DNA of 63,660 nt, from positions 1,376,642 through 1,440,301 of the forward strand of contig BFEA01000007.1 in NCBI GenBank assembly GCA_003427395.1. Reading direction: 5' to 3'. This DNA comes from Chara braunii (Eukaryota > Plantae > Charophyceae). Made by a program: the position numbers and the translations under genes. This document shows, piece after piece, positions 9,111-43,261 of the stretch. Positions within the stretch are counted from its first letter, which is position 1, and every line of letters begins with the position of its first letter. Below the pieces are notes generated by a model. It was given only the letters and a program-made list of their open reading frames with translations, did not search any database and was not told the DNA's origin.

Positions 9111-9202
<92 letters not shown>
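8864..9202. repeat. (GT)n(GA)n microsatellite with gap
   Basis: Visible runs flanking N gap 8956-9110. Confidence 0.95.
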
Positions 9203-9205
<3 letters not shown>

Positions 9206-9227
9206 GCACTCGTCAGGAACAGCGTTT

Positions 9228-18490: not shown

Positions 18491-18567
18491 AATCTTTCCC
18501 TAGAACATGAAAAGATAGAACGCCCTGATTTTTATCTTTTGTGCATGTTAAGAATAGTGGAGCAAGA

Positions 18568-20041: not shown

Positions 20042-20812
20042 TCAACTTACCCGCCCTACGTGTACAACCAGCCCATTTTGTCATGGTGCCAAGTCGTTCG
20101 GACGCGACAAGCCCGTTGGACGCCTGGGCGTAGTACAACCTGGAGGTCGTGCCGCCTTGCAGCCGAGATCTGACCAAAAAAGGTAACGACGAGAAGCAGT
20201 CCTATTTATAGACCGTGAAATGCGGGGAAGGATCCGTGCCGATAAAGTGCAGAGACACGCGTGAGGAATGGGTGGGCCCAGGGAGATGAGCAATTTCCAC
20301 AGAAGAAGGAATTACATGGGAAGAGGAGGAGATGGCAGACAAATTCAAAAAGTTAGCGAAATCGGATGAATGACCACGCTGCACGGGCTGTCACCCTCCA
20401 CGCACCTTGTTCCGACCAGCTTCTGCCCAACCAATGGCCCGCTAAAACAGCGAGAGGCGGGGGACAAAGAGGCGGAAGAGAGAAGAATGCGTCGAAATTA
20501 GAGGAGGAGGGTGAGCAGGAAGCTGGTTCGCTCACATGCATGCATGCACATAAACTCACGTCACGCACATAAGCAAGACCGAAACAACCGAGGATGCTAA
20601 AAATAGACAATGTGGCTCAAGACTCTACATGCCATCTGGCAGTGGCGGGGGAGTCATGTGTCAGTAACCCAAGGACAAACTCTCAGACAACAATTGTACT
20701 CCTGCATTGGAAGACCCAATTAAGTCCAAGTAAATTGGGTTTTGTACCATGGGTTACCGTACCCCTTACGGCGAGGCACGAGATGTGGATCATCACAGGG
20801 AATGGAGGGCGG

Positions 20813-23800
20813 TGTCGGTGCGAATACCCTGACAAGGGTATCCGCCCTAGTTTTTGCAAATGACGGGAAGTAAGTTTAAAAGTCTAAGTAGGCCGCGCGA
20901 GTCGCGACTAAGTCTGTTGGGCTACATTGATAGGATGGTTGACTAGAGTAGAGCATGAGTGGGCACGCAATCTTAAGGCACGCGTGTGATTCATCCGTTT
21001 GATTAGGCAGCCGGCCTAGTTGGCTGGCTTGAATCTTTTTGTTATTAGGAATAAAAGGTTCGTACTTATTCAAGACAGTTGACCGTTGGTAGTCCGACGT
21101 ACGGAGAGGGATGCGAGGCGACCACGGCACAAAGAGGGCAAGCCCGTGCGGATGCCTAGCGACAACGTGCCTAGTTAGAAGAAGGAATGAGGGCCTAGGC
21201 CTGGGGGCGGAGCAACACCCATTTATATAGGATACCGCGCACATTAGTCCCAGGTGTGGGCTTAGCCTTATAGGTTACAGTACTGGACTGGCACGGCGGA
21301 GGTGCGGGGATCGAGACAGGCGGCGGCTTAGGAGCATTGGCGCGACGAAGGGCTGGGGGTTGAGGGTCCCGCAGGACTATCCCTCTTAGTTTTGCTGGGG
21401 GAGTCCGAGCGCGGGCCCACTTGCTTCATCTTTTTTTGTTGATTTTACTTTTTATTTTTTGCTAGTTATTTTATTTTGGTTTTATCTTGGCAAGTGCCGG
21501 CTCCGAGACCGACCGTGGCCGGAGAGTCGGTTCTGAGGATATACCACTGAGCTATTGGGGGATAGGCCTGCATTTAAATCCCGATGAACGGAGTGGATGA
21601 GTAAAGCCAAGAGTCCTGGGTCATCACGGCGCGATGGGCCGGCAGGTGGCTCGTCCTTCCGGACATCCGTTAAAATTAGAACGGTATAGAGAAGGTTAGC
21701 TTGGCCCCTGCGCAAGGCTGATGCGCGCATAAAGCAGGGGAAGGTTTTTCCCAAGGTTTTTTGTGACTACTTGCTATTTTCGCGGACTCCTCACGTTCAG
21801 GCTTTGCAGCCCAGTACGGTATCGGGTCGCAGTGCGCTCCCGAGGTGAAGCGCAGCGCCCGATTGACGACAACGAGGACAGGCGAAGTTGGAGATGGCGA
21901 CGGACTAGGCAGGGCGCAGTGGAGCGAGGATAGCGCGTATGGTCGTTGATGAGACTGGGCGAGGGAGGAGACTAAGTAGAGGTTTTTGGACACCGCGAGT
22001 TCAGTGGTGCGGTCAGATTCCGCGATAGGGGTGTGGGTTGAGTGTTCTGGGATTCGTGGGCTGCGCGAGCCACGGAAGAGCGGAGTGTGAAGTCCCCGGG
22101 CGCTTCCGTGTGAGACCGGGCGGAGGAAGATGCAGACTAAAGGTTGTAAGGACAGACGAAACCTATGGTGAAGACGGATTAGCGTGAGAGTTAGTAGGGG
22201 GGCAAAGGATAGGAAGAAGGAGCAAAAAGAAAGGGGTGGGGAAGAGCTAGCACGTACGTGGCCATCTATTGGCAGGAGGTCCATTCGATTGCGACGTGGT
22301 CCCTCAACGATAGTAGTAGATGGATTATTCAGAATGTGCATGCATACTTCCGCATGCTAGAAGAAGATTCATGTGGGGTTGCTTACCTGAGAGAGCAACG
22401 TAGGGGGAGACAGCGGGAGGCGGCATGGAGGTGGCAATAGAAAGAAGTGGGGACAGTGAAGTTCAGCGAAGCAGAATGCTTAATAAGCGGTTTGAGGCGC
22501 GACGAGCGTAATGGCGATGTCAGTGTCACCTATGAATAAGTGGTTTGGCTAGAGCAAACACAAGGAGTTGCGCCTGGGAGAGTGTTTCGGGGTTGCGAAG
22601 AATATGCAATGCATCTTCTCTCGTTTGAAGGGAAGATTCATTCTCTTTTTGGCATGGATCAGCCATAGGCACAACCATGTACCAATTGAAGGCGAACGAA
22701 AGGGAGGATACTCACCTGGTTGGAAGGACTAATAAGACCGACCACATGGGAAGGGGAGACAGCCATGGTAAGGAGTCGGAGATACGGTGTAAAGGAGACG
22801 AACGAATTTGTTTCTTTTCGACGAAAAGATTCATTTAGCTCAATATCCCCTGTCGACTGAGCGAAGTAGCGGGGGATGTGTCTCGGGGTTGGAGACTTAC
22901 CTATGCGTTGCTTGGTGTGTTGGTGGATGTAGCGCTTCCTTGCTGTTCTTCGTGTATGGCTGAGAGCTGTGTACATCCCCACCTTTCAACGGAAGGCTTA
23001 TCTTGGTTTTGCCAACGTTGATAAAAGCGGCCAATCAGTCTCGATCCCGCAGTCAGTTCCTGTCGAAATCTAACCGATTCAGCTACCCGTGCTTGTCATA
23101 GTATTTTCTACTATTGGAGTTGACCGCAGTGGCTACTAGCTCTATCAAGCTTACGGCCTAAAGTTGGGCTTACTGGTGTGGCTCAATCTTCATGTCCGCC
23201 ACTAGGGTCACGATATGGCTCGCCAAGAAGACTGCCTACAACCAAAGTATGTAGAATTGGTAGGGTACCGAGAGAGAGGGAGAATATATATATATGTATA
23301 CTTGCCTCAGGGAAGAACGTTGCACTCAACGCATGATCGTGTATTGACCAGAGTATGGGGTGCCAATACATCTGCCTATAACCCAGCGGTAGACTCATTG
23401 TCATTGCACATTCTTGATCAGTGGGGCACGACTCGTCAGGACATGTCTCGATTAGACGCTACGGTCGCTTCCTGCTTCAATAGCGGTGTCCCAATGTACA
23501 TAGTTTGACGCTCTTTTTTTTTTTTGACTAAGGGAAAGAGGTGGAGGGCATACCTGCTAGCCTAAGTATCGCCCATCCGTGGTGCGAGATTAGAGACTAG
23601 CCGGTTGGCCGACTTACTGTTCATCTGGCCAGCGGAAGCTGCAGTAGGACCAGCTACGAAGCAGGCAGTCTGCGGGGCTGGCGGTCTGCAACTTTTCGCA
23701 CAGTGGCTACCGCTAACAACTACCGTGTACTGTGGATGTGTCGGGGGGGCAGTGCACGAGCTGCTGCCGCCGCGGACTGGGCTCAAACTGTCACTATTGG

Positions 23801-25690
23801 CCACCGCTGTGCACAGGTTACTGATTGCGGGTTGCTGTTGGTTGTGTACGGGCTGCTCCGCATCACTGTGCACAGCTACTGCTGCTGATTGAGTGTGTGC
23901 AAACTACTGCTGCGGGCTGTTGTTGACTATGCACAGACCGCGGTTGGGTATTGTGCGCAGACGGCTGCTGTCGGGCCTGCTGAGCTGCACGCGGACTGTT
24001 GCATACCGCTGTGTACTGCTGCGAGTAACTAAAGGCTGCCACCGAGCACTGCTGTGGGTTGCTGAGTACTAGGCACAAATGTCTGCTGCCTGCGGTTGAT
24101 TACTGCGAACTGTTGCTCAATGCTCCATACTGATGCACATGGCTGCTGGCTGCTGCATGTTGCAAATGACTGCTGCAGGTTGCTGTTGATCAGCGTTGGG
24201 AACTGTTGCTGCTGAAGACTATTGTTGTTACTGTTGATCAGCGCAGAGAACTACTGATGTTGGTAACTACCGCGGTTATTGAGGACTGTCGTTAAGTATT
24301 GCTGCTGCATCCAAGGATTGTTACAGGTTGTTGGGCGACTGCGATTGGGCTTAGAGGAGTGACTGAGATTGGGAAAGAGGGGGGTTAGTATGATGATTTG
24401 GGAGGTCGGCAGAAGGGCGACTTCGACAGTTTGGCGTGGGAATTGACCAAGTTGCTGCGTACTTGGCTGCCATTGCGGGACCCTCAGGCGCATCAAGGAA
24501 CGAAGGCCCTCTCCCTTGCGAGTCTGAGTGCACCCTCCTTGGATCTGAGAGTCTCAAAACTTTCTCTATCTGCCCTTCTCACTCTAAGTTTGATCTATTT
24601 GGTTATGAGATGAAGGCGGCAGGCGGGATTGCAACCTGTAGGACCGCAACAAGACTCTGCGGAGAGTCATCCCACCGATTGCAGGAGCTTTATCGGAACC
24701 TAGGTGAGGTTCTGGAGGCAGGGAACCATCAGATAATCCATCTCTGTCTGTACATCCGACTACACCCATGTTTGTCTATTCCCCCCTGTAGCTTGATTGA
24801 CGTATGCATGCCTGTCCCTATGATTCTTGCTTTCTTTTCTGGAAATAACCAGTTTAAGTAAAGAAATGCATGTGTAATGTCAGTTTCACCTTCTTTGCCT
24901 GATTGAAAGCAGATTGTGGGGTTGCATCTGGGGAAAGGGTGGGGGAAAGGTTGTATTGCCTGAAGTTTGACCGGGCCAACCAAAGGCTGGGCCAGTTCCA
25001 TAAGTTTGGGAAGACCCTGTGCTATGTTTTATTTTGAATTGCCTGGAGAGCCAGACATGTTCTATAAGTTTGGGTGGTTTTGGTCCAACGCCTCGCACAT
25101 GCTAGAACCAGAAGGTTATAATTTTGTTATACTTCATTATTATATTATCTATGAACAGGTTAGTCAGACAGGGTTCCATAAGTTTGGGTGGTCTTACTAT
25201 AACTTATCACCAACTGCAGAGAGTATTAATTATGAATAAACTTGTGGTACGAAGGGGCAGGCTGAGTCTTGAGCTGAAAATGATCGGCTCAGCTATATAC
25301 TACCTCAAAAGACTAAGTGCAGACAATTATATAAATCCTGGATACTTAAACAGGCTTGAGTCTTGAGCTGAATAAACGCCCTCGGCTTGTCCACCTCTGC
25401 AATTGACTGCAATTGCAGCTGATCAGCTTTCGTACTGTGGACTGGTAGCTTGGAGGGGATACGCCCACCGAAGGGAGGTGGCAGCGCCCGTAAGGTGGAG
25501 GTAAGTCGTGCCTTGCGTAGGCCCTGTCCTGTTGTAGGGGCTCGCGAGAGGTATGGCTGGCACACTCGGCCGGAGCGACTTGCGGAAACTCCATGTATAT
25601 TCGCGACGAGGATTGAGACCAACTCCTGCGTGACGCGGTCGGGAGGGTCATGCGCTACCCTTGAGTAGTGTCGGGCCGATGCGCTCAACA
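20813..25690 (+). repeat. 5' LTR (4878 bp; lacks a 2.44-kb segment present in the 3' LTR)
   Basis: Colinear with 31908-36454 plus 38892-39198. Confidence 0.93.
21653..21762 (+). ncRNA. U6 snRNA-derived sequence in the 5' LTR
   Basis: GTCCTTCCGGACATCCGTTAAAATTAGAACGGTATAGAGAAGGTTAGCTTGGCCCCTGCGCAAGGCTGATGCGCGCATAAA...TTTTT. About 54/61 identity by hand over the core to plant U6 as I recall it. Starts at the U6 +1 G and ends in T-runs. Confidence 0.92.
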
Positions 25691-25692
25691 GG

Positions 25693-25710
25693 TGGCGTCG
25701 TTGCCGGGGA
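25693..25710 (+). promoter_or_regulatory. Primer-binding site complementary to the tRNA-Asp(GTC) 3' end
   Basis: TGGCGTCGTTGCCGGGGA, 2 nt after the LTR end; matches the Athila-type PBS TGGCGCCGTTGCCGGGGA at 17/18. Confidence 0.88.
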
Positions 25711-28475
25711 TAACGGTTGCCTGCCGTTGTCCCTGGTGGAACGACATTCGGGTATGGGAATGTGAGAAATAGGTAAAGTGGGAAGTTTTCTTTGGGTTTT
25801 TGTGATTAATCGATTGATGGTATTCGATAGAGACCGAATGAGAGTTGATTATGTGAGATGGTAGTGGCTAAGTGCAATAACGATGTCGCATGAAGAATAA
25901 ACATTTTGGCTATGCGGTCAAGTACTTTAACTAGCCTGGTGGTAGGTGGAATTGATACCCTCTCCTGACGTTAAAAGTTGGTAAGGTTTTGGACGATGCC
26001 TCGGATGACCAATATGGCTAAGGAGAAATGAGGGGGTATCAACACGCTGAGTGTGAGGGTTGTGGGAGTTGGCCTTGTAAAGGAGCCTATTATGTTAGAA
26101 GTCATTGAAGGGCTTCGAGGAAAGTCGGGCTAAGGAGGCCAAAAGCTTTATGAACTTGGTATTGGGGTCCTTGAGTCTAGGTTCTAAGCGGTTGTTTGGC
26201 CTATATAGTCATAGGAGTGTGAAATTTGTCCCACGTGATGTGTTTGAACCAGACGTATGGGACGACAGATAGGTGCAGGGAATGCCGCATTGTTACCTCA
26301 CTGGAAGTGGCTACAGAAAGTAGTGAATTTGCATGACGCCTTCCCCTATTAAGGAAATACCTGATCTGAGGGGGTAATTGTAATAACAGTGAAGTAGCTA
26401 ACGCTTAGACTATGTTGCTTACTTTTGATGGGGCGATGACTTGTTGCTGATGTTAGACCTTCGCTTGAATCTTTTCAGGTTTGGACCATCCACTTTAATC
26501 TATAGGTTGAAGTTAAGGACTTGAGACTAGTCTTTTCTAAGGGCATCCCTTACGAGTTATATGTTGAACTCATCCATATATGCCAGATCTTATATGCGTA
26601 TGTTTGCTTAATGTCTAATTATGTGAGGCTATGTGCTTGATGATTATATTTCCTTTAATAATTATCCTTGTCAGAAATATTTACATAGGCCATGTACCTG
26701 AAGTATGCATTTGAACTATTCAGTTTGCAAGGATTTATATAAGTGTCTCAAGTCCAATTACCGATTTATGGCTGTCTATTAAGGTTTGTATGTTTGGATT
26801 GCTCCTCAAAGAGGGGGTAGAGATATTATGCAGAATCCATGTATGATGCGGATTCAGAGGTGAATGGAGTAACCGCTTCTTGAGATAAGTATTTCTCAGG
26901 AAGTGATCAATGTCTAAGGCCTGCCCTAAGGAAGGTTGCAATCCTATATTATTATTCCCTTAAGAGGTCGCTTTGAAGAAGCTATAATTTTGTCTTATAA
27001 GTAGTAGTGAGACCCACGCCGGAACTAAGTTCCTCGTCCATAGTGGGGTGTTGTTGTTGTATCTCCTGTGATAAAATGACTACACTACTACTGAATAGGA
27101 GGAAAGTGTTTGAGCCTTGTTAGATCATGGTCTATAAGGGAAGTAGCTACTACTTGCCACAAGAAACGTAGGGGGTGAATCCCCAACTATTTTTTGTGTC
27201 AAGTGGGTTCACCAGCGCAGGACGGGGTGGCACCACCCGAAGCGTGTATCATGAGGTTGTTTGTTTTATTGACAAGGGTCTGCAAGGAACGGACGCTGGA
27301 ATTGGAGGGAAAAACCGTGAGGTTTGATCCTTGAGTGGGACTCGGGGAGTTGAGATAATCCTTTCTAAAGAGGATTACACTGCCCCTCGCCACAGTATGC
27401 TTCTGTCAAAACTAGGGGAGTAAAATATGGTACTTTCACAAGAATTATATTTGTGAGTACTAACTGTTGGTAATCATATCTTTGACCATAATGTGTCTAT
27501 CATATGTTATGCCTGTCGATATAGACCTGTTGATATGAGATATTTGCATATGCTTCGAGTAACTGACTAGCTTGTGTATGATGTGTTTAGATTATTATGA
27601 GTAGTATTGTTGTCAGTTACTAGGGAAATATATCATTTTTCATGAGTATTATAATTGTGAAATTTTTTATATCTATGAGTGTAATATTATCGTGATATAT
27701 TACCATTATTATTTTCTCTAGGTTGGGTGGTCATAAACACTGGAAATGACGCATTTTAGGAAAAGATGATTTGAAGCCGAGGCTTCAGGAGTAGGGATTG
27801 TATAACATGAGTATCAATATGATAACGGAAGGCGTATGCTGAATTTGGGTTTCCTTCTGCCCCATTGCAAGTCGTCCTGCCTGAGTTTCTGGTAGAGAAG
27901 TGTTTCAGGGGACAAGAGAGAATAAAGGCTGCAGCGGAAGCCGCTTTGAGAGCACGAGAATGGGGGTATGAGCGCTATACGTGCGAGCTGATATATGACC
28001 TATATCTGGATCAAAGATTCTTACCCCATGGTCAAGGACTGAGGAATTTGGTCAACATAGTTGATGCCTATGCTTGCTCTCATGATCCAGAGAAAAGAGC
28101 GCTGACTGGGATGAGATTCGGGCGGTAGTGAACCAATAGAGAGTATCCTCATGCTCTGCCAAGTGCGTCACCCTCAGACTCGTCTACGGCCGCCTTACTA
28201 TGTAGTACGAGTGCGAGAGTCAGTGACGTTTGTGATAATAATTAATATCTGCCTATGCCTAGCTTTGAAAGTTTTGCCAATGTGGAATGTATATTGTTCA
28301 TAGTACCCTTAAAGTTAAAATAAGGATGACTAAAGCATAAAGTCTTATTTGCGTATATAAGGGAGAAAAGAGGTGTGATCTGAATATTAGAAATACTTTT
28401 GTTGCCCCCACCTAGCTTAAGGAGACAATCTGATGAGTTGTTAATTGCTATGCGTATCAGGCCAGCATCGACAAC

Positions 28476-29849
28476 ATGGAGGAAGAAAGTGGTTTCACTA
28501 AGATCCTGCTTTGGAGGAGTGCATACCTCACTAAAGTATTGTTGTGCAAGTCAGTACAAGATTCGATGTCTCCAGACCTGCGGGCCTTGCTGTTTCAGGG
28601 GAGGAGTTTGCCTGTCTTCCTGAGCGGCTATCGTGACTTCAGTCTCGCGAAGAGGTGGGATGAGAAGGCGATGTGGAGCATATTGTCGTTATTCGTCTGT
28701 GAAGAATTGAGCGAGGAAGTATATACCTTTATGTTAAAGTCGCGAACTTGGAATGAGATAGAGACCACCTTGAGGATAAGGTTTTCAGAAGATGAAGCAG
28801 AGGTTCAGCGAAGTGGAAGCCTTGTGCAACGAGTCGGGGTCGCGCCAACAGTAGAAGAGTTAAGTGGTATACAAAGGCAAGTGGGGGTATTGGAAGAGAG
28901 GTTGTCGCGACTGGATGAAGCCAGGCAAGGCAAACGGAAGGCTTCAGAGGGCGCCTCAAGTGAGTCGGCTGGTCAAGGTGAGGAAGAGACAAGAGGGAGT
29001 CATCGAGAATCACTCCTCGTAAGAACCCCGACAAGGCGGACTAGCGTCCAAGGAAGAGATAAGGGCAATGAGATGGTTGAGGTAAAGGAGGAGCAAAAAT
29101 ATAGCATAGCCCTGTCTATCGTTGCCTCTGATTCAAAGAGGGGGCGGGTTGACGGGGAAGCGTCTACAATTGCAAGTCGGAAGGAACGAAGGAGTGGGAG
29201 ACAGTGAGAGCGCTGGGCAAAGATGGTGTGCAATTGTTGTGAAAAAGTTGGTCATACCCCTCGGAGATGCAAAGCAAAGGGGATGACAAAGGAAAAAGAG
29301 AGGCCTAAATCTCCCAAGTTAACGAAAGCTCAGCGGAAAGTGAAAAACCTGGCCCAGGGAGGTCAAGGTACCGGAAAAGGGCAGTGTTCGCGGCAAGTGG
29401 CGGCCGCCCGTCAAGAAGTGGGGGACAAAGCAACACAAAAGGGGCCTCTGTTGGCTGAGCAGGGACTAAATGGGCAGTGGGCACCGTGTCTTCAAGTGGG
29501 TCTGTGGTCGATGTATAATCCATGTGTGCCATGGACACAATGCAGTTGTTTGGGCCCACAAATGAGTATGATACCGCCTAGGCCTCCTGCAGCCCAGACT
29601 TGACCTCAGCCCATGGGACTGTTGCAGCCGCTGACACAACAAGCGTCGCGAGGCGGCATGGCCAGTGGAGGAAGCGAAAGGCAGCAGGATGGAAGGGTCC
29701 GCGGGGATGGAGGACGCGACAATAGAGGACGCGGTGGCAATAAGGGTGACTTTGGAGGAAAGGAAGCAGGTTGGGAAAAATACATTTGCAGACATTGTGC
29801 CAAAGAAGAGCACATAATGAAAATTTTGTCGAGAACGAAGGGTCGATGA
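28476..29849 (+). pseudogene. gag: Decayed gag of the LTR element
   Basis: ORF pieces 28476-29207, 29223-29603 (CNCCEKVGHTPRRC, CCHC knuckle) and 29613-29849 (RGG-rich, then CRHCAKEEH). The N-terminal FQGRSLPVFL...W...TWNEIETTLRIRF segment is capsid-like. Confidence 0.75.
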
Positions 29850-30289
29850 AGCAAGTGGTTTAATAAGGACTAATATTGAGGGAGATGTTTTCGACAAGGC
29901 TGGGGAGTATATCGATCCAACCATCCCTGGGGGAACACAGAAAGAAGCTTTGCGGCGAGATGGAGCATCGAGTATTGCCTCCTTAATGTACTTGTGGAGA
30001 AGAAAGGCTTGTGTGAGAAGGGCCTGGAGTTTTGAGTAGACTACAAGTATAAGCAAGAAATCTCAATTATGTAGCTGCGGTAAATAGGCACAGGGTACAA
30101 AGGGAAAGGGTTTCGTAATAATGGTCCGGTAAGACAACCCGAGTTGCAGGTGGGAGGAACCCCAATAGAACAACTATATATGTGGGGTATGTTAGGACTG
30201 TCTCAAATCGAGTTATTAGAATGTCTCCGAGCGGATAGAGCAAGGAGTGAGTTTTTAGGACATTGTTACGAAATGAAAGTCTACTCCAC

Positions 30290-30390
30290 TAGACTTATCA
30301 TTGGGAGAAGGGGATATGGGGCCTACTTCGTGTCTAGGTCCAGATGAGTGTACATATGTGAGAGGTATGAGAGACTTGGGAAGAGACCTC
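30290..30390 (+). pseudogene. Possible aspartic protease remnant
   Basis: LIIGRRGYGAYFVSRSR*VYICERYERLG resembles the (AL)LDSGS..N.I.E...ERLG pattern at the expected position after gag. The catalytic motif is destroyed. Confidence 0.3.
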
Positions 30391-31449
30391 AGTGTGTGTG
30401 ACGTAGACTCTCTAACCTAGAAGTGTAGTAAGGCTTGTGTATGAGTAATTCGTCGTGTTGCTTAGTTATTTAGATATGTCTTTAGATTCCTCCGATTTGA
30501 GGGATGCGACTACGCTCTGACTGAGACTGTTTCAGTTTGAACTCTAGTCAGTGTTGAGTTGTTTTATGAATTAGACCCCTTCAGTATGGGAAGGTGGTCT
30601 TGTGCTTATTGGAAGACTCATCTTCAAAAAAAATAAGATGTTTTAATAAAAGGTCGCGTGAGAGTTCATCCTAAACAGAGAAGGGATGACTGGGAGACCT
30701 GTTGAGTGGGACCTGCTTCGTATGGAAGGGGGTGAATAGATTCAATGGTATGGTAAGTTGGTTTTTAACGATAAAAGTCTGATGAGGAGGACCACGTTTT
30801 TGCTTGGTCATTGGTGGAATTATAAAAAGGTCGCAAAAAGCTTCATCGTGAGATGTCTCGGGATGTGTAGTTTTCTTGCCCTGGTCAAGTAAGGGGGCCA
30901 TGGCCTTGCGGACCTGGAGGTCATTCTGTTTTGTGATAGTGGAGAGGCTGCCATATTATCTTTATGTTGACACACAGAGGGCTGGTAAATGTCTTTTATG
31001 TGTGACCAACCTTTGCGTTGTCCCGCAGTAGGCCTGTATCGTTGCGACACACCGTTTAGCCGCTTGTGCTAAATCCTGGGCATTTATGAGAATACCAAGC
31101 TAATGGTGAAGTTTAGCATCACTGGGGCGCAACCCTTAGTGTTGGCTGCTGACCGGCGCAACCTGGCAGTGGGCCCACGTCTCGCCCAAAGGGGTAAAGA
31201 CTTAAGGGGTGTGGCCACCCAGGAGGGTTTTACCTGCCGCGGGGGGCGTGGGATAGGAGTCGAGTCTTTTTTTTGAGTCCTGATTGAATGCTTATCAAGA
31301 GAAAAAACCTATCTTGGCGCAACCTGCGAGGGCACTACCGCTAAAATAACAAATGCGGTGGACCGCAGACCTGGCACGATCACCCAAACTACGGTGGGCC
31401 AAGATGGAGACCTAGCCTTTCTGTAATACACTGCAGGAGGTGTGTTGAG

Positions 31450-31509
<60 letters not shown>

Positions 31510-31907
31510 TGTTAAATTGTGAGGATTGTTGGAAGAAGGCGAAAGTGCCTTCTAAGGTCTCGGTTAGGTCAAAGTCCTGCTAGCAGGGTAGAGACCAAGG
31601 GCACTTAACGAGAAGTCGGCGGTTGTCTATGACAAAGGGGAGAGGACGGGTAAGAGGGGCCGTTGAGACTTATGCTGTAGTACGTATGTCCAGTACACCG
31701 ACGTCCTAGTGTCAGGGCGATGGAGACCCAGGTTGGAACCCTGGCGGCATATAGTTATAAGGACTTTGATTGTTGGAGGCCTCAGCCCTGCGTCGGTCGG
31801 CTAATCGGATTGGTTCCTTTCTCGTCGGCATTTGGAGTTGTGAATGGATTTATAGCTTTTCGATCTTGCGAAGCGACGGGGACGTCGCTTAATATGGTTC
31901 GGTAAGT

Positions 31908-34900
31908 TGTCGGTGCGAATACCCTGACAAGGGTATCCGCCCTAGTTTTTGCAAATGATGGGAAGTAAGTTTAAAAGTCTAAGTAGGCCGCGCGAGTCGC
32001 GACTAAGTCTGTTGGGCTACATTGGTAGGATGGTTGACTAGAATAGAGCATGAGTGGGTGCGCCTTCTTAAGGCATGCGTGTGATTCATCCGTTTGATTA
32101 GGTAGCCGGCCTAGTTGACCGACTTGAATCTTTTTGTTATTAGGAATAAAAGGTTTGTTCTTATTCAGGACAGTTGACCGTTGGTAGTCCGACGTACAGA
32201 GAGGGATGCGAGGCGACCACAGCACAAATAGGGCAAGCAAGTGCGGATGCCTAGCGACAGTATGCCTAGTTAAACGAAGGAATGAGGGTCGGACTAATTC
32301 CTAGACCTGAGGGCGGAGCAACACCCATTTATATAGGATACCGCGAACATTAATCCCAGGTGTGGGCTTAGCCTTATAGGTTACGGTACTGGACTGGTAC
32401 GGCGGAGGTGCGGGGATCGAGACCAGCAGGCGACGACTTAGGAGCATTGGTGCGACGAAGGGCTGAGTGGTTGAGGGTCCTGCGGGACTATCCCCCTTAG
32501 TTTTGCTAGGGGAGTCCAAGCGCGGGCCCACTTGCTTCAACGATTTTTGTTGATTTTACTTTTTATTTTTTGCTAGTTATTTTATTTTGGTTTTATCTTG
32601 GCTAGTGCCGGCTCCGAGACCGACCGTGGCCGGAGAGTGGGTTCTGAGGATATACCACTGAGCTATTGGGGGATAGGCCTGCATTTTAATCCCGACGAAT
32701 GGAATGGATGAGTTAAGCCAAGAGTCCTGGGTCACTACGACGAGATGGGCCGGCAGTTGGCTCGTCCTTCGGGACATCCGTTAAAATGAGAACGGTATAG
32801 AGAAGGTTAGCTTGGCCCCTGCGCAAGGCTGATGCGAGCATAAAGCAGGGGAAGGTTTTTCTCAAGGTTTTTTGTGACTACTTGCTATTTTCGCTGACTC
32901 CTCACGTTCAGGCTTTGCAGGCCAGTACGGTATCGGATCGCAGTGTGCTCCCGAGGTGAAGCGCAGCGCCCGATTGACGACAACGTGGACGGGCGAAGTT
33001 GGAGATGGCGACGCGCTAGACAGGGCGCAGCGGAGGGAGGATGGCGCATATAGTCCTTGATGAGACTGGGCAAGGGAGGAGACTAAGTAGAGGTTTTTGG
33101 ACACCGCGAGTTCAGTGGTGTGGCCGGATTCCACGATAGGGGTGTGGGTTGAGTGTTCTAGGATTCGTGGGTTGCGCGAGCCACGGAAGAGCGGAGTGTG
33201 AAGTCCCTGGGCGCTTCCGTGTGAGACCGGGCGGAGGAAGATAAGGACTAGAGGTTGTAAGGACAGACAAAACTTTTGGTGAAGACGGATTAGCGTGAGA
33301 GTTAGTAGGGGGGCAAAGGATAGGAAAGAGCAAAAAGAAAGGGGTGGGGAAGAGTTGGCACGTACGTGGTCATCTTTTGGCAGGAGGTCCATTCGATTGC
33401 GACCTGGTCCCTCGACGATAGTAGTAGAAGGATTATTCGGAATGCGCATGCATACTTCCTCATGCTAGAAGAAGATTCATGCGGGGTTGCTTACCTGAGA
33501 GAGTAACGTAGGTGGAGACAGCGGGAGGCGGCATGGAGGTGGCAATAGAAAGAAGTGGGGACAATGAAGTTCAGCGAAGTAAAATGCTTAATAAGGGGTT
33601 TGAGGCGCTACGAGCGTAATGACGATGTGAGTGTTACGTATGAATAAGTGGTTTGGCTAGAGCAGACACAAGGAGTTGCGCCCGGGAGAGTGTTTCAGGG
33701 TTGCGAAGAATATGCAATGCATCTTCCCTCGTTTGAAGGGAAGATTCATTCTCTTTTTGGCATGGATCAGCCATAGGCACAACCAAGTACCAATTGAAGG
33801 CGAACGAAAGGGAGGATACTCACCTGGTTGGAAGAACTAATAGGACCGAGCACATGGGAAGGGGAGACAGCCATGGTAAGGAGTCGGAGATACGGTGTAA
33901 AGGAGACGAACGAATTGGTTCCTTTTTGGCGAAAAGATTCATTTAGCTTGGTATGCTCCGTCGACTGAGCGAAGTAGCGGGGGATGTGTCTCGGGGTTGG
34001 AGACTTACCTATGCGTTGCTTGGCGTGTCGGTGGATGTAGCGCTTCCTTGCTGTTCTTCGTGTATGGATGAGAGTTGTGTACATCCCCACCTTTCAACGG
34101 AAGGCTTATCTTGGTTTTTCCCAACATTGATAAAAGCGGCCAATTAGTCTCGATCCCGCAGTCAGTTTCTGTCGAAATCTAACCGATTCAGCTACCCGTG
34201 CTTGTCATAGTATTTACTACTATTGGAGTTGACTGCAATGGCTACTAGCTCTATCCAGCTTACGGCCTGAAGTTGGGTTTACCGGTGTGGCTCATCTTCA
34301 TGTCCGCCACTAGGGTCACGATATGGCTCGCTAAGAAGACTGCCTACAACCAAAGTAGGTAGAATTGGTAGGGTATGGAGAGAGAGGGAGAATACATATA
34401 TATATGTTTACTTGCCTCAGGGAAAAACGCTGCACTCAACGCAGGATCATGTATGGGGCTGTCAGTTCATCTGCCTATAACCCAGCGGGAGACTCATTGT
34501 CAATTGCACATTCTTGATCAATGGGGCACGGCTCGTCACGACATGTCTCGATTAGACGCTACGGTCTCTTCCTGCTTCAATAGCAGTGTCCCAGAGTACG
34601 TAGTTGGGCGTTTTTTTCCTTTTTTTGACTAAGGGAAAGAGGTGGAGGGCATACCTGCTGGCCCTAGTATCGCCCATCCGCGGTGCGAGATTGGAGACTA
34701 GTCGGTTGGCCGACTTACTGTTCATCTGGCCAGCGGAAGCTGCAGTAGGACCAGCTACGAAGCAGGTAGTCTGCGGGGCTGGAGGTCTGCAACGTTTCAC
34801 ACAGTGGATACCGCTAACTACTACCGTGTACTGTGGATGTGTCGGGGGGGCAATGCACGAGCCGCTGCCACCACGGACTGGGCTCGGACTGTCATTATTG

Positions 34901-37900
34901 GCCACCGCTGTGCACAGGTTACCGACTGCGGGTTGTTGTTGGTTGTGTACGGGCTGCTCCGCATCACTGTGCACAACTACTTCTGCTGATTGAGTGTGTG
35001 CGAACTTTTGCTGCGGGCTTTTGTTGACTAGGCACAGACTGCGGTTGGGTATTGTGCGCAGACGACTGCTGCTGGCCACTGCTGTCGAGCCTGCAGAGCT
35101 GCGCGCGGACTGTTGCATACCGCTGTGTACTGCTGCGAGTTACTGAAGACTGCCATCGAGCACTGCTGTGGGTTGTTGAGTACTGGGCACAAATGTCTGC
35201 CGCCTGCGGTTGATTACTGCGAACTGTTGCTCACTGGTCCATACTGTCGCACATGGCTGCTGCATGTTGCAAATGACTGCTGCGGATTGCTGTTGATCAG
35301 CGCTGGGAACTGTTGTTGCTGAAGACTATTGTTGTTACTGTTGATCAGCGCAGAGAACTACTGATGTTGGTAACTACCGTGGTTATTGAGGACTATCGTT
35401 AAGTATTGCTGCTGCATCCAAGGATTGTTACAGGCTGGTGGACGGCTACGATTGGGCTTAGAGGAGTGACTGAGATTGGGAAAGAGGGGGGTTAGTATGA
35501 TGATTTGGGAGGTCGGCAGAGGGGCGACTTCGACAGTTTGGCGTGGGAATTGACCAAGCTGCTGCGTACTTGGCTGCCATTGCGGGGCCCTCAGGCGCAT
35601 CAAGGAACCAAGGCCCTCTCCCTTGCGAGTCTGAGTGCACCCTCCTTGGATCTGAGAGTCTCAAAACTTTCTCTATCTGCCCTTCTCACTCTAAGTGTGA
35701 TCTATTTGGTTACGAGGCAGGCGGGATTGCAAACCGTAGGACCGCAACAAGACTATATGGGGAGTTAGCCCAACGATTACGGGAGCTCTGCCGAAACCTA
35801 GGCGAGGTTCTGGAGGCAGAGAACCATCAGTTAATCCATCTCTATCTGTACACCCCACTACACCCATGTTTCCCTATTCCCCCCTGTAACTTGATTGAAG
35901 TATGCATGCCTGTTCCTATGATTTTTGCTTTCTCTTCAGGACATAGCCAGACTACTAAGTAGAGGAATGCATGTATAATGTTAGTTTCAACTTCTTTGCC
36001 TGATTGAAAGCAGATTGTGGGGTTGCATCTGGGGAAAGGGTGGGAAAAAGGTTGTATTGCCTGAAGTTTGACCGGGCCAACCAAAGGCTGGGCCAATTCT
36101 ATAAGTTTCGGAAGGCCGAGTGCTATGTTTTTTTTTGAATTGCCTGGAGAGCCAGACATGTTCCATAAGTTTGGGTGGTCTTGGTCTAACGCCTTGCACA
36201 TGCTGGAACCAGAAGGTTATAACTTTGTTATACTCCATTATTATATTATCTATGAACAGGTTAGTCAGACAGGGTTCCATAAGTTTGGGTGGTCTGACTA
36301 TAGCTTATCACCAACTGCAGAGTGTATTAATTAAGAATAAACTTTTGGTACGAAGGGGCAGGCTGAGTCTTGAGCTGAAAATAATCGGCTCAGCTGTATG
36401 CTACCTCAAAAGACTAAGTGCAGACAATTATACAAATTCTGGATACTTAAACAGTTTAGGACGACTAGGGTGGCCTAGTCACAAACCCAAAGAAGAGAAA
36501 AGTTGTTGTGCCCTATGTTTGTGTATACTTCATGGTTGGGCTAGACATGTTCCATAAGTTTGGGTGGTCTAACCTTATGCCCTATGTAAGGGTGGTATGA
36601 GGGGATAAGTTATTGAAAGACTATGAACTATTGTTTGCTAAATTGACTTGAGGATGGTGAAAGCACTTACCTTTGTGGTTTGGCCAACATATGGCTGAGT
36701 GATGCCCCTGCTTCGTCTGATTTTCAGTTGATAGGTAGTTGCTTTAATTGTTCGCCACGTGTTAGAGTCATAGGAGTTAGTTTCAATTCCTGCTTTTTAT
36801 GGGCTAAGTTTTTTTTACTAAGATCAATTTCTGCATTTTTTTGGATCTTTTATTTTTACTTGGTCCTGTATAAATCTCGGTAAGCCACTTTCTCTACGGG
36901 AAGCGCTGCCGAAATTTCTACAAAACCAAGGAGTTTGTTAAAACTTTATCTTCTTCAGGATCCGGTCTTGTTGGTTTTTTGACCTAGTAAGAATCTGGGA
37001 AACCTCATTTTCTAAAGGAAGTGCTGCCCAAATTTTTGCTAATTCAGGGAGTTAGACAAAATTGGGCCTTGAAGGGTCAAAGTCATTTCAGATTCTAAAC
37101 TTAGCTTTGTATAAATCTTGGAATAACACTTTCTCTACGGGAAGCGGTGCCGAAATTTCTACAAATCTAAAGAGTTGGTTAAAACTCTCTCTTAACAGAA
37201 CTCAGACTTTATGTCTGAGTTCATATCTGACTTTGTATAAATCTGGGAAGTCCTCCTCTCTAAAGGAAGTGCTGCCCAAATTTTTGTTAAGTCAGGGAGT
37301 TAGGCAAATTTTGACTTTCTAGAATCCAAAAGTCTGATTTTTGGGCTAGTACAAATTATGCGATTGCACTTTTTCTACGGGAAGCGCTGCCGAAATTTTT
37401 CTAACTTAGAAGAGTTAGATTGTATTTCGTCAGGTGGCAAGTTCTGGGGATCCCCTCTGCGTAGGGGAGATTATGCCAGGGTCTACCCTTGCTCTGGACA
37501 CGGCTTAGTAGTAGATTCAAGCTTAGTCGAATAGGGTAATTTGAGTGAGATCGTGATATGGAGGTTATTCTCCACGAACTTATAGACTTACCTTGGGGAT
37601 TGGTCTGTCTTGTGTTACAGGTTTTCTTGAACGAATCGATTCAGGATTTGGGCTAGATTTAGTTTGATCCTACAAGGATCACCTTCTGTTATCACTGATA
37701 ACAGGTCGGTTGCCGATTCGTCGGTCTACGACTCAATTCCAACTCACCCTCAATACTCAACCTAAAAAGGTTTTAGCCTTGGAGATTTTTATTGTTTTGT
37801 TAAGGTTTCACCCGGACTTTTATTGAATGACCATTTAACAAAGGTACTGAATATTTAGTTATGGTTGGTTGGCTGGAGGTTGGGGTTTGCATGGCTAAAG

Positions 37901-39198
37901 CGAGGGGTATGAGTACAGAGAGTGGTTGGGGTTGACTCCGTGTAATGTTTGGACTTTGTTGGACTTTTAATGTGATTGCAGGTATGTTCAAGGGTTCGAA
38001 TTTTTTATTTGACTGCCTGCGATCACTCATATACATGTGGTTGTGAGGAGTCTCACTGTGATTGTGATAAGTGATCGTCACATACTTACCCCCTTGTATA
38101 TATATAGATATATATATGTGTGTACCTGTGTTGGAAGTTCACATGACCCAGACCAAGGGGCTAGCGTATTAAGGGGTAAATGGCGGGTGAGGTAGGTAGA
38201 AAACCCCCGCCTCTTGATTGTATATTTTTTATGAGTTCTTAATCGGACATTGGTCCTGGGCCGGGATTCGAGGTCCTTGTCCAGGACATCCCAAGCTTTA
38301 GACTTTACATAGAAGGAATTTTTCCCCGCGCAGAGCCTATTCGCCCCGCCTGCTAAGACACTCAAGCCAAATGCGTCAGGTCTCGTGGTGGCTGCACGAC
38401 TATTCCTTCAACCGTGCAATATCGTGAGAGGGTAGACCCTCAAAATACTTCGAGTCTGACACTTCGGTGTCATAAGTGGTACTCGGATCCACGAGGGACT
38501 GCTTGACTGTGGGCACTACATAGTACGCCATCATTGTGACTGCTTGCGTATGCTTGCATTGCGAGTCGATATGAGTAGGCTCTGCGACCGCGCAATTTTA
38601 TACTAAGTCTCGTGCGCAAACACCTATCCAATTCCGCATTAGGAAGTTATGGGATGGCTACCGAGGGACTAGGAGCGTTGTCGCGTTGTTTGTGTTGCGT
38701 CGTATTGTGCGTAGGTTGTGTGTGTCTTATTTTTACGTTCTTTAGAATGGCGTGCGAGTGGTGTGTGGGATGCGTCCTAGTCGACCGACGACGGGTCGCG
38801 CTTGGGACTTCAGCCCCCCAAGATGTCGGTTCGTGTGTGGGTCCGATAGAGGTGTACTACCGCGCGTACCCCCTATGCTACAGCGAACGAGAAACGCCCT
38901 CGGCTGGTCCACCTCTGCTATTGCAGTTGATCAGCTTTCGTACTGTGGACTGGTAGCTCGGCGGGGATACGCCTACCGAAGGGAGGTGACAACTCCAGTA
39001 AGGTGGAGGTAAGTCGTGCCTCTCGTAGGCCCTGTCCTGTCGTAGGGGCTCGCGAGACGTATGGTTGGCACACTCGGCCGGAGTGGCTTGTGGAAGCTCC
39101 ATGTATATTCACGACGAGGATTTAGACCAACTCCTGTGTGACGAGGTCGGGAGGGTCCTGCGCTACCCTTGAGTAGTGTCAGGCCGATGCACTCGACA
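31908..39198 (+). repeat. 3' LTR (7291 bp)
   Basis: TGTCGGTGCGAATACC...GCACTCGACA. Contains ~120-bp subrepeats (GGAAGCGCTGCCGAAATTT) at 36880-37400. Confidence 0.93.
32764..32873 (+). ncRNA. U6 snRNA-derived sequence in the 3' LTR
   Basis: GTCCTTCGGGAC (5' cUUCGg hairpin) ATCCGTTAAAATGAGAACGGTATAGAGAAGGTTAGCTTGGCCCCTGCGCAAGGCTGATGCGAGCATAAA...TTTTT. Same diagnostic substitutions as the 5' LTR copy. Confidence 0.92.
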
Positions 39199-40756
39199 GC
39201 GGAGAAAGGACGGCGGAGAAGACAAAACAAGCAAGAAAGAGGAGAGGATGACGAAGAAGGACAAGAGACACGAAGGGTCCGAAGGGGAGATATGCACTCT
39301 GCCCGCATGCCAATCCGCATATTTACTTTCAAACATTTTGTGAAAAAAAGCACTATGGAAATTGGAGAGGAAATCGTACAGTGTTATGTTTTCACTACCC
39401 GGACCTGAACTCCATTACCTATTTCACTGACAAGCAATTGAGAGAGGAAGACATGAGAGCGACAACACGTTCAGAGAGCCCCAACTCGTTACCTTTTGGG
39501 CGACCCAAAGCCTTCGACGATTTCAACCTCAGAACGGTAATACTACTGTGCACATGACATTCATCGCAAAAGCACAACATACCGCTCTATGCACACTTGT
39601 TCACAACCAAAGACGACGTCATGGAAGAAGTTAATCAACATCTGACCTTGGACAGAGGCGACGCGTTTTATTTCGTCTCACGATAATGTGGCCTTGCGGC
39701 AAGGTCCTCAAGCACCAGGCTTACATTTTGTTCCGTTGAAAACGAAGAAAAAAAAAAGAAAATAACATTTTTTATAATCTCGAACGCAACCTCTTTAGCA
39801 AGGCAAAATGATTTCTGGTCGTGCGATGCAAGAGATCGGGCAACCACTATTACGTCCACCCACTGACGTTTCTCGTTGGTCCTCTGAGCCTTTTGCTACC
39901 GTCCCCGAATCTGACCAACGAAGTCTGCCAGAGCAATTCGCAATCCACGGGGTTATCGACTCTGGAGCTAGCAGTAAAAACCAGATAAAGTGATTTGTAA
40001 GTAAACACATACAAAGAACTTGCAGGTTATGCATTGATAAGAGACATAATCTTCATTGCCCTTTATCTTTCCTCTAAGACTTCTTTTTATTTTCCTTGTG
40101 CTGAGAAAGAAAAAAAAAAAAAAAAGAGAAAAAGAGAGAAAAATAAATAAATAAAAAAAAATCGACATTAAGACTTAGTTATTTAATGACACTCTGAATT
40201 GACATTATACGAACAACAATATTGAAGAGTTCATTGCATAGTTGATTTTTTTTCAAAAAAAATAAATAAATAAAAAATTCAAATCTTATACATACTTATC
40301 AATGACGAGCAGTTCTTAATAATAGCATGAGTACACATATATATATCTATAAAATGGATGTATCTGAGCAACTGCAATATGCACGTCTTGTATACAAAAT
40401 CCTACATAGTATTAACATGTCTTCATCCTAAATATTATTCATCTATACAATGAATATATCTGATCAACTGCGATATGTATGTTTTATAAACAAACTCCTA
40501 CACAATATTAACGTATTTTCATTTAAAGGATTTTATCTCTAATTAGTTTATTTCTTTTCATTCTTTAGAATTACAATTTATATAATATTGAAGCTAATAA
40601 TTCAATTTATATTTATTTATATATTCATACATACTCATTTAGTTGTTATATATGTTTGTTGTATTGTTTATACTTCTGTTCTTTTCATGAAGAAACAGGG
40701 AAAATTCATTTCAAACTGAGAGTTACATTTTTTGAAATTCACTTTGAAATTCAAGA

Positions 40757-42634: not shown

Positions 42635-43043
42635 TTCACTTTCTTTTTGCACATTTCGAGAGTAGTCGAGCCAGGGGGCTCCCCTACTTTCGAAATGTGC
42701 AAAACTAGAGTGAATCTTGCGCGAGAACATGGAAACATGCATGACTACGAGGCCCCAATGATGACACGCATAGGTACGGAACTCTGAGAAGGAAAAACAA
42801 AAAAGGAAAAAAAAAAGAAAAGAAACTGGGTCGTTGTCAGCACGTGGTTCCCCTAGGGCTTGTACGTTGTTATCAGCCCGTGTATTTCGTTGGGCCCCCG
42901 TATCTCCGATGCACAAAAGACAAAAATCATGGCCTTCTATATTTCCATGTTATAGCGAAGATTCACTCTCGTTTTGCATATTTCGAGATCAATCGTGGAA
43001 ACAGAGAGTGAATCTTCCACTCGAACATGGAAAGATACAACGC

Positions 43044-43077
<34 letters not shown>

Positions 43078-43226
43078 GGGGAAAATAGCCTGCCCCTCGG
43101 ACATAGATCACTAGACTGCAGCCACACGACGGAGGAGTTTAGCCCGGAGTATAAACTTTAGACAGGACTGGACTTCAAAACGACAGTTCGAAACATATTT
43201 TCAAACTTTAACCCTCACCGCGCCCT

Positions 43227-43261
<35 letters not shown>

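What the first reader, a model, noticed from the sequence alone, without database searches (positions are those of the whole stretch)
21653..32873. LTR retrotransposon carrying a variant U6 spliceosomal snRNA in both LTRs
Seen: a near-full-length U6-like sequence lies about 850 bp into each LTR (21653-21762 and 32764-32873), so it was part of the element when it inserted rather than a later pseudogene insertion. It starts at the U6 +1 G with the 5' hairpin, keeps the AGC triad and GGCCCCTGCGCAAGG, and ends in T5/T6 Pol III-type terminators. Both copies share the same departures from canonical U6: ACAGAGA>ATAGAGA in the 5'-splice-site-binding box, AGATTAGCA>AGGTTAGCT, and GGATGA>GGCTGA. Established: Cassandra elements carry 5S rRNA in their LTRs, U6/L1 chimeras exist in mammals, and U1/U2-derived SINEs exist in crocodilians; I know of no LTR family carrying U6. 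Inference: the element may use U6 for Pol III-type transcription, La/LSm2-8 binding and nuclear retention, escape from small-RNA silencing by mimicking an essential RNA, or as a splicing decoy.
Basis: partly seen in the sequence, partly recalled or inferred. Interest (0 to 1): 0.92.

Follow-up and report, generated by a model that had tools for sequence, protein, structure and literature searches.

The report
Decayed U6 copy riding in giant LTRs
An old, gag-only retrotransposon of the alga Chara braunii carries a promoter-less, mutated copy of the splicing RNA U6 in both of its 7-kb terminal repeats; it looks like an RNA-derived hitch-hiker, not a working part.

Summary
Rfam's U6 model (RF00026) matches full length at 21653-21749 and 32764-32860 (59.7 and 58.8 bits, threshold 44), at the same place in two direct repeats.

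The repeats are true LTRs of an 18.4-kb element (20813-39198):
- TG..CA ends and a 4-bp target duplication (GCGG).
- A primer-binding site conserved in relatives.
- A gag-only interior.

The LTR is about 7.3 kb, not 4.5 kb. The 5' copy has lost 2.4 kb. All protein relatives are from Chara braunii.

The functional reading is not supported:
- No upstream USE or TATA promoter.
- Seven of 45 core U6 positions are changed.
- A related element (L002) carries U6 cassettes with different invariant residues hit.
- Nine of ten related loci lack LTR-borne U6.
- The U6 diverges as fast as its flanks (3/97 against 6.8%, P=0.10; 73% against 77% identity to L002).
- This LTR variant has about two to three copies in the genome. 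No poly(A) RNA read came from it.

U6-like sequence is very abundant elsewhere in the genome.

Verdict: an RNA-mediated capture carried as a passenger. I found no published report of U6 in LTRs. This scan found the same arrangement earlier on other DNA of this genome (s1-529360, s1-529338).

The parts
20809..20812 (.). Left target-site duplication GCGG
   Evidence: The same 4 bases flank the 3' LTR at 39199-39202.
20813..25690 (+). 5' LTR (TG..CA), carrying a 2.4-kb internal deletion with 20 nt of filler at 25354-25373
   Evidence: 92.1% identity to 31908-36454, and 25374-25691 matches 38890-39199. More than 100 DNA contigs and 87 RNA reads break at 20813. The missing segment is present in the LTRs of L001-L010.
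21424..21566 (-). tRNA-like / SINE-like fragment with an A-rich tail, antisense to the U6 and present in both LTRs
   Evidence: The sequence shows a box-A-like TAGCTCAGTGG followed by an A-rich tail. ARAGORN and Rfam do not call it. Some genomic contigs join 21394/5 directly to 21653 and so lack this piece.
21653..21762 (+). U6-like copy in the 5' LTR, from U6 +1 to the T5/T6 runs
   Evidence: RF00026 59.7 bits, full model, 21653-21749.
25693..25711 (+). Primer-binding site, 2 nt after the LTR end
   Evidence: The same 19-mer is conserved at the same place in L003, L004, L006, L007, L008 and L010. The window's copy differs from most of them by one C>T change. Assigning it to tRNA-Asp rests on my memory of plant tRNA-Asp and was not tested.
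27826..30036 (+). Decayed gag region in several frames, with a CCHC zinc knuckle near 29229-29270; no pol
   Evidence: ORF pieces. 16 homologues at 40-62% identity, all from Chara braunii. No Pfam hit. The C-terminal part is 45% identical to the region upstream of the protease in an autonomous Ty3/Gypsy element nested in L007.
31908..39198 (+). Intact 3' LTR, about 7.3 kb
32764..32873 (+). U6-like copy in the 3' LTR
   Evidence: RF00026 58.8 bits, full model, 32764-32860.
39199..39202 (.). Right target-site duplication GCGG

Best explanation
The window holds an old, non-autonomous (gag-only) LTR retrotransposon of Chara braunii. It is related to the alga's Ty3/Gypsy elements, spans 18.4 kb and has LTRs of about 7.3 kb.

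About 850 bp into the variable 5' (probably U3) part of the LTR, an ancestor of this copy acquired a cDNA copy of U6 snRNA. The copy starts exactly at U6 +1, runs to the U-tract and brings no gene promoter, so it was copied from the RNA and not from the gene. Either of two routes could have done this, and I cannot separate them:
- The element's reverse transcriptase switched templates onto a co-packaged U6 RNA.
- A LINE-type retroposition of U6 landed in the LTR of a then-active copy.

Reverse transcription then copied the module into both LTRs at every later transposition. That explains why both LTRs carry it with the same mutations. It has since decayed like the surrounding LTR and does nothing detectable.

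Shown here: the anatomy, the absence of a promoter, the decay, the patchy distribution, the low copy number and the silence in poly(A) RNA. Inferred: the capture route and the lack of function.
For: - Element anatomy: TG..CA ends, TSD GCGG, conserved PBS, gag homologues, LTRs shared with L001-L010.
- The U6 starts at +1 in three separate LTR cassettes (window, L002a, L002b). Their upstream sequences are unrelated and their 3' ends vary.
- The 100 nt upstream hold no TATA at -30 and no USE-like motif; the sequence there is G+C-rich.
- Seven of 45 near-invariant core positions are changed in the window. L002a instead has GGC for the AGC triad and ACAGAGG for ACAGAGA.
- Between the two LTRs there are 3 substitutions in 97 nt of U6, against 6.8% overall (P=0.10). 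Pooled with the L002 cassettes the count is 11 of 282 against 16.3 expected (P=0.11).
- The window's U6 is 73% identical to L002a, no better than the 77% of the nearest alignable LTR block.
- U6 is absent from the LTRs of L003, L004 and L006 even at E<=1, and from L001 and L007-L010 at the gathering score. On the gag tree the U6-bearing L002 is sister to the U6-less L007.
- DNA depth next to the U6 is 22-29, where single-copy depth is about 9. That means roughly 2-3 LTR copies in the genome.
- RNA depth is zero across 21726-24290, and at most 1 of about 2,600 laid reads is 99% or more alike.
- The fold is not unusually stable (z = -0.63).
- Retroviruses selectively package U6 snRNA (PMC4378196, PMC1885669). 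A poly(A)-tailed U6 retrocopy at window 100-262 shows that U6 retroposition happens in this genome.
Against: - The U6 is an island of detectable similarity between the window's LTR and L002's LTR, inside about 3 kb that is otherwise unalignable. This could hint at retention. Independent captures from the same host RNA explain it equally well.
- The first roughly 30 nt (5' stem-loop and following bases) are nearly identical in all six LTR-borne cassettes, even where the rest has decayed.
- All LTR-borne cassettes seen here are in sense orientation, though there are only 2-3 independent cases.
- U6-like sequence is very abundant in the genome (342 scan notes), so some carrier families may be successful.
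- Only oligo-dT RNA-seq could be examined. A 100-nt Pol III transcript would not appear in it, and the reads tool silently removes human-like reads.
Confidence: 0.75

Rival explanations
1. The U6 module is a selected cis-acting part of the element. It could be a Pol III unit, as in Cassandra/TRIMp3 elements. Or it could act within the element's Pol II genomic RNA as a protein-binding or nuclear-retention signal (5' stem-loop, La/LSm site).
For: - U6 modules recur in the LTRs of at least two diverged lineages, at a similar place downstream of a homologous block.
- The 5' 30 nt are well kept in all cassettes.
- All cassettes are in sense orientation.
- Many notes of the scan report U6 in Chara LTRs.
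Against: - As far as is established for land plants, streptophyte U6 genes use upstream USE and TATA elements and have no internal promoter. None is present here.
- The neighbouring tRNA-like piece is antisense, so it cannot drive the U6.
- The module is missing from 9 of 10 related loci.
- Its divergence equals that of the flanks.
- This lineage has only about 2-3 LTR copies and no poly(A) RNA.
Confidence: 0.12
2. The copies are working variant U6 snRNA genes of the host that happen to lie in LTRs.
For: They pass the Rfam gathering score over the full model length. They keep the AGC triad and the GGCCCCTGCGCAAGG core, and they end in T-runs.
Against: - ACAGAGA is changed to ATAGAGA.
- The A of the C-A wobble in the internal stem-loop is changed to C, and the U4/U2-pairing bases are altered. 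The 3' third is rearranged.
- There is no promoter.
- Nearly all U6-like DNA and RNA reads carry the canonical G at 21678, not this variant's A.
- The two copies drift apart at the neutral LTR rate.
Confidence: 0.02
3. The two copies are not LTR-borne. A segmental or tandem duplication of about 11 kb, or a later gene conversion, placed a U6 pseudogene twice.
For: Two direct repeats spaced 11.1 kb apart would also fit a duplication.
Against: - The repeat has TG..CA ends flanked by the 4-bp duplication GCGG.
- A conserved PBS lies 2 nt after the 5' repeat, with gag between the repeats.
- Ten related elements elsewhere in the genome have the same layout.
- Hundreds of contigs break exactly at 20813.
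Confidence: 0.03

Closest known systems
Cassandra, Helenus and Ajax (TRIMp3: non-autonomous LTR retrotransposons with 5S rRNA- or tRNA-derived sequence in their LTRs; PMC10886601, PMC10853983)
   Same: It is a non-autonomous LTR element whose two LTRs carry a sequence derived from a small Pol III RNA. Kojima proposes that such elements arise when a small-RNA retroposon inserts into an LTR, which is one of the two routes considered here.
   Different: - Those elements are miniatures, with LTRs of roughly 100-300 bp and no ORF. This one is 18.4 kb, has 7.3-kb LTRs and encodes gag.
- 5S and tRNA sequences carry internal Pol III promoters and are conserved across copies. U6 relies on an upstream promoter that is absent here.
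- The U6 module is decayed and is patchy among relatives.
- The Kojima paper holds neither 'snRNA' nor 'small nuclear'.
U6 retropseudogenes and U6/L1 chimeras of mammals (PMC4476161, PMC11838501)
   Same: It is a full-length, promoter-less U6 copy starting at +1, made from the RNA by a reverse transcriptase and later decaying neutrally. The window also holds a free, poly(A)-tailed U6 retrocopy at 100-262.
   Different: This copy sits inside an LTR and is duplicated by LTR-element replication. No poly(A) tail, no LINE 3' fragment and no clear target duplication flank it.
Host-RNA packaging and transduction by retroviruses (U6 and 7SL in virions; PMC4378196, PMC4997597)
   Same: This provides a plausible route: U6 is selectively packaged, and reverse transcriptase can switch onto co-packaged RNAs.
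   Different: Packaging by Chara retrotransposon particles is untested. The cited work describes packaging only.
TR-GAG / gag-only non-autonomous LTR retrotransposons
   Same: The interior encodes gag only, and the element presumably depends on an autonomous Ty3/Gypsy partner for pol.
   Different: The LTRs are exceptionally long (about 7 kb) and have a hypervariable 5' part that collects small-RNA-derived pieces.

Membership tests
U6 spliceosomal snRNA (Rfam RF00026), as a functional gene | Covariance-model score at or above the gathering threshold over the full length | tested here: met
   59.7 and 58.8 bits against 44, model positions 1-105.
U6 spliceosomal snRNA (Rfam RF00026), as a functional gene | Invariant ACAGAGA box, AGC triad and internal stem-loop with C-A wobble | tested here: not met
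   ATAGAGA replaces ACAGAGA. The AGC triad is kept. The wobble A is changed to C. In all, 7 of 45 core positions are changed.
U6 spliceosomal snRNA (Rfam RF00026), as a functional gene | Upstream type-3 Pol III promoter (USE near -70 and TATA near -30 in land plants) | tested here: not met
   The sequence from -100 to -1 is G+C-rich with no TATA at -30. The promoter of Chara's own U6 genes is not known to me, so this rests on the land-plant rule.
U6 spliceosomal snRNA (Rfam RF00026), as a functional gene | Expression as a discrete RNA of about 100 nt | tested here: inconclusive
   No read from this variant in two oligo-dT RNA-seq runs. Such libraries do not capture small Pol III RNAs.
LTR retrotransposon | Two direct terminal repeats with TG..CA ends, flanked by a target-site duplication | tested here: met
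   20813-25690 and 31908-39198, with GCGG on both sides.
LTR retrotransposon | Primer-binding site next to the 5' LTR | tested here: met
   A 19-nt site at 25693-25711, conserved in six relatives. The tRNA identity was not tested.
LTR retrotransposon | Polypurine tract before the 3' LTR | tested here: not met
   The 30 nt before 31908 are not purine-rich, although family RNA reads show the same kind of sequence there.
LTR retrotransposon | gag and pol coding capacity | tested here: inconclusive
   A gag homologue with a CCHC knuckle is present. No protease, RT or integrase is recognisable in the 6.2-kb interior, and related loci share the same short interior. The element is therefore non-autonomous.
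Cassandra / TRIMp3 | Miniature size (short LTRs, no ORF) | tested here: not met
   18.4 kb, 7.3-kb LTRs, gag present.
Cassandra / TRIMp3 | The small-RNA-derived LTR segment supplies an internal Pol III promoter and is conserved across the family | tested here: not met
   U6 has no internal promoter in plants (established knowledge). The module is absent from 9 of 10 related loci and diverges like its flanks.
U6 retropseudogene (RNA-derived copy) | Starts at U6 +1, ends in the U-tract, lacks the gene's flanks | tested here: met
   Three cassettes share the +1 start and have unrelated upstream sequence.
U6 retropseudogene (RNA-derived copy) | Poly(A) tail or LINE 3' fragment with target-site duplication (LINE-mediated route) | tested here: not met
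   There is no A-tail after the T-runs. The only flanking repeat is a weak GTGRCT. The downstream flank is low-copy.

The most novel reading that the evidence does not exclude
Chara braunii LTR retrotransposons repeatedly recruit and retain U6 modules, above all the 5' stem-loop, in sense orientation. The modules would act as a cis-element of the element's RNA or as a Pol III unit. That would define an snRNA-bearing counterpart of Cassandra/TRIMp3 and would help explain why U6-like sequence reaches thousands of copies in this genome.
Probability: 0.1. Interest if true: 0.7.

Novelty: new variant of a known kind. Interest (0 to 1): 0.4.

Why it matters
LTRs carrying 5S- or tRNA-derived sequence are known. 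In the library I searched I found no report of an LTR carrying U6. So the arrangement itself extends the list of host small RNAs that LTR elements can pick up and spread.

It also matters for annotation. Chara has a very large number of U6-like sequences, and some pass Rfam's threshold, so snRNA gene counts for this genome will be inflated by retrotransposon-borne copies.

For this particular copy the evidence points to a neutral passenger, so its biological weight is small.

Tried and rejected
- The 221-aa ORF in the LTR beside the U6 has no homologue. Ten ORFs from the interior, the LTRs and the left flank have no credible Pfam hit; the only match (PsV capsid, 14.3 bits against a cut-off of 27) is far below threshold. 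They are probably not genes.
- I first read 36455-38889 as an insertion into the 3' LTR. Related loci and reads show the opposite: the 5' LTR has a deletion.
- ARAGORN and a permissive Rfam scan find no tRNA in the LTR. The tRNA-like piece is only a fragment, and it is antisense to the U6.
- The idea that the rewired 3' end gives the U6 a special fold (note s1-552467) found no support: the minimum free energy is -31.6 kcal/mol and z = -0.63 against shuffles.
- The test for slower decay of the U6 between LTR pairs was not significant (P = 0.10 and 0.11).
- No tRNA gene was found in any locus to check the PBS assignment.
- P0008, which looked like a gag-PR-INT polyprotein, is a gene model that merges a gag-only element with a nested autonomous Gypsy element.
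Full report
**Observation**

The two U6-like sequences are real. Rfam's covariance model RF00026 matches end to end (model positions 1-105) at 21653-21749 (59.7 bits) and 32764-32860 (58.8 bits). The gathering score is 44. A permissive scan of the LTR finds nothing else.
- a start at U6 +1 with a short 5' hairpin;
- the AGC triad and the GGCCCCTGCGCAAGG core kept;
- T5 and T6 runs at the end;
- three departures shared by both copies: ATAGAGA for ACAGAGA, AGGTTAGCT for AGATTAGCA, and GGCTGA for GGATGA.

In all, seven of the 45 most conserved core positions differ from the family consensus, and the 3' third is rearranged.

**The element**

A direct repeat of 92% identity joins 20813-25353 to 31908-36454. 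It resumes at 25374-25691 and 38890-39199.

Ten related loci were fetched from the Chara braunii assembly GCA_003427395.1 through gag homologues. In their LTRs, the stretch equivalent to 36455-38889 is an ordinary part of the LTR. RNA and DNA reads that reach 25374 continue upstream with the sequence found at 38860-38889. So the 3' LTR (31908-39198, about 7.3 kb) is the intact form, and the 5' LTR (20813-25690) has lost 2.4 kb.

The repeats begin with TG and end with CA. GCGG flanks both sides as a target-site duplication. Two bases after the 5' LTR lies a 19-nt primer-binding site that is conserved at the same place in six relatives. From memory it matches the 3' end of plant tRNA-Asp; I could not test this.

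More than 100 contigs and 87 RNA reads break exactly at 20813.

The 6.2-kb interior holds only a decayed gag with a CCHC knuckle. It has no Pfam match. Its 16 homologues, at 40-62% identity, are all Chara braunii proteins. Related loci have the same short interior. The C-terminal part of gag resembles the region upstream of the protease of an autonomous PR-RT-RNaseH-INT (Ty3/Gypsy-order) element nested in L007.

The element is therefore a gag-only, non-autonomous LTR retrotransposon of 18.4 kb. The two LTRs differ by 6.8% in substitutions, with transitions twice as common as transversions. It is an old, dead copy.

**Was the U6 in the element before insertion?**

Yes. It lies at the same position in both LTRs with the same derived bases. 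That is what replication of an LTR element produces. The duplication alternative fails on the element anatomy described above.

**Does the element use the U6?**

Seven lines of evidence argue against it.

1. *No promoter.* By established knowledge of land plants, U6 genes are driven by an upstream USE and a TATA box and have no internal promoter. The 100 nt upstream of both copies are G+C-rich and have no TATA at -30. The adjacent tRNA-like fragment with an A-rich tail (21424-21566) lies on the opposite strand and cannot drive the U6.

2. *Different damage in different lineages.* One related element (L002) carries two tandem U6 cassettes in each LTR, with Rfam scores of 45-48 bits. There the AGC triad reads GGC and the box reads ACAGAGG. 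In the window it is the ACAGAGA C and the stem-loop wobble A that are hit. Nothing keeps the U6 catalytic core intact.

3. *Neutral rate.*
   - Between the window's LTRs the U6 has 3 changes in 97 nt, against 6.8% overall (P = 0.10).
   - Pooled with the L002 cassettes the count is 11 of 282, against 16.3 expected (P = 0.11).
   - The window's U6 is 73% identical to L002a. That is no better than the 77% of the nearest alignable LTR block.

4. *Patchy distribution.*
   - L003, L004 and L006 have no U6 even at E <= 1.
   - L001 and L007-L010 have none at the gathering score.
   - L005 has only a 5'-truncated, near-canonical U6 piece outside a clear LTR context.
   - On a gag tree the U6-bearing L002 is sister to the U6-less L007, and the window sits on a long branch of its own.

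5. *Low copy number.* In DNA contigs of the species, single-copy depth is about 9. The LTR just downstream of the U6 has depth 22-29, and the LTR centre has depth 5-60. This LTR variant therefore exists as this element's two LTRs plus at most a few others. A few contigs join 21394/5 directly to the U6 +1, so a small number of relatives carry the U6 without the SINE-like piece.

6. *No transcript seen.* Two oligo-dT RNA-seq runs give zero depth across 21726-24290. At most one of about 2,600 laid reads is 99% or more alike. Reads over the U6 cover only its first 40 nt or so, carry the canonical G at 21678, and run on into canonical or other U6-like sequence. They come from other loci. Two caveats apply: such libraries cannot show a 100-nt Pol III RNA, and the tool silently drops human-like reads.

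7. *Fold.* The variant's fold is not unusually stable (z = -0.63).

**How it got there**

Three cassettes (window, L002a, L002b) all begin exactly at U6 +1. Their upstream sequences are unrelated and their 3' ends vary. This is the mark of a reverse transcriptase running to the 5' end of the RNA, not of DNA-level gene capture.

Two routes fit, and I cannot separate them.
- *Template switching inside the particle.* Retroviruses selectively package U6 (PMC4378196, PMC1885669, PMC4997597). The sense orientation of all LTR cassettes seen here fits this route, but there are only two or three independent cases.
- *LINE-type retroposition into the LTR of an active copy.* Kojima proposes this route for TRIMp3 elements (PMC10886601). 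The neighbouring antisense SINE-like piece with an A-rich tail, and a free poly(A)-tailed U6 retrocopy at window 100-262, show that such events occur here. The LTR-borne U6 itself has no A-tail and no clear target duplication.

**Genome context**

The first 40 nt of U6 reach a summed contig depth of 38,000-60,000 per bin, and more than 200,000 at position 21678, against about 9 for single-copy sequence. At least 86 distinct contigs contribute, and their upstream flanks are heterogeneous and A-rich. The tool warns that this depth is not a copy number. Even so, it is three to four orders of magnitude above single-copy depth. It agrees with the 342 notes mentioning U6 in the 828 windows of this genome scanned so far.

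Two earlier follow-ups on other DNA of this genome reached compatible conclusions:
- U6 copies in very long LTRs, picked up more than once (s1-529360).
- A promoter-less captured U6 in a solo LTR (s1-529338).

I used these as leads only. The tests reported here are my own.

**Comparison with known systems**

The nearest described systems are Cassandra (5S) and Helenus/Ajax (tRNA, 5S). In those, a small-RNA-derived segment with an internal Pol III promoter sits in the LTRs of miniature elements and is conserved (PMC10853983, PMC10886601). This case shares only the bare arrangement. It fails the size, promoter and conservation criteria.

It shares its origin with mammalian U6 retropseudogenes (PMC4476161). 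It differs from them in being embedded in, and multiplied by, an LTR element.

My literature searches found no report of U6 in LTRs and nothing on snRNA expansion in Chara.

**Verdict**

- The structural interpretation is right, with corrected LTR boundaries.
- The functional interpretation is not supported.
- The most likely reading, at about 0.75, is a neutral, RNA-derived passenger.
- A selected cis-role remains possible at about 0.1. This rests mainly on the well-kept 5' stem-loop and the recurrence of such modules. Genome-wide rate and orientation tests, together with small-RNA data, would settle it.

Noticed in passing
window 100-262: A third, heavily decayed U6-derived sequence. Pieces of the U6 5' region, the ACAGAGA box and the central core are interrupted by AT-rich stretches and followed by a run of about 21 A. 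It looks like a free, LINE-type U6 retrocopy outside the LTR element.
   Followed up: partly
window 9175-9448: A fragment of eukaryotic SSU rRNA (RF01960, 62.4 bits, two separate parts of the model joined). It is flanked by GA microsatellite and assembly gaps, and may be another host-RNA-derived piece in repeat DNA.
   Followed up: no
window 15767-18492 and 42635-45353: A large inverted repeat of about 2.7 kb at 86-90% identity brackets the U6-bearing element and its surroundings. It could be two copies of another repeat in opposite orientation, or the ends of a larger structure.
   Followed up: no
window 21424-21566 (minus strand): A tRNA-like / SINE-like fragment with a box-A-like motif and an A-rich tail, 90 nt upstream of the U6 and antisense to it, present in both LTRs. 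Some genomic contigs join 21394/5 directly to the U6 start and so lack it.
   Followed up: partly
L002 1421-1505 and 1767-1866; 14837-14933 and 15183-15282: Two tandem U6-derived cassettes about 345 bp apart in each LTR of a related gag-only element. The upstream cassette keeps the first 30 nt or so almost perfectly while the rest is badly decayed.
   Followed up: partly
L007 13377-32257: An autonomous Ty3/Gypsy element (PR, RT, RNase H, integrase; LTRs of about 5.4 kb, 98% identical over most of their length) is nested inside a gag-only element. The public gene model for P0008 merges the two.
   Followed up: partly
   Followed up: no
window 31860-31907 and family reads: The sequence just upstream of the 3' LTR is not purine-rich, yet family RNA reads show much the same sequence there. 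The family seems to lack a classical polypurine tract.
   Followed up: no
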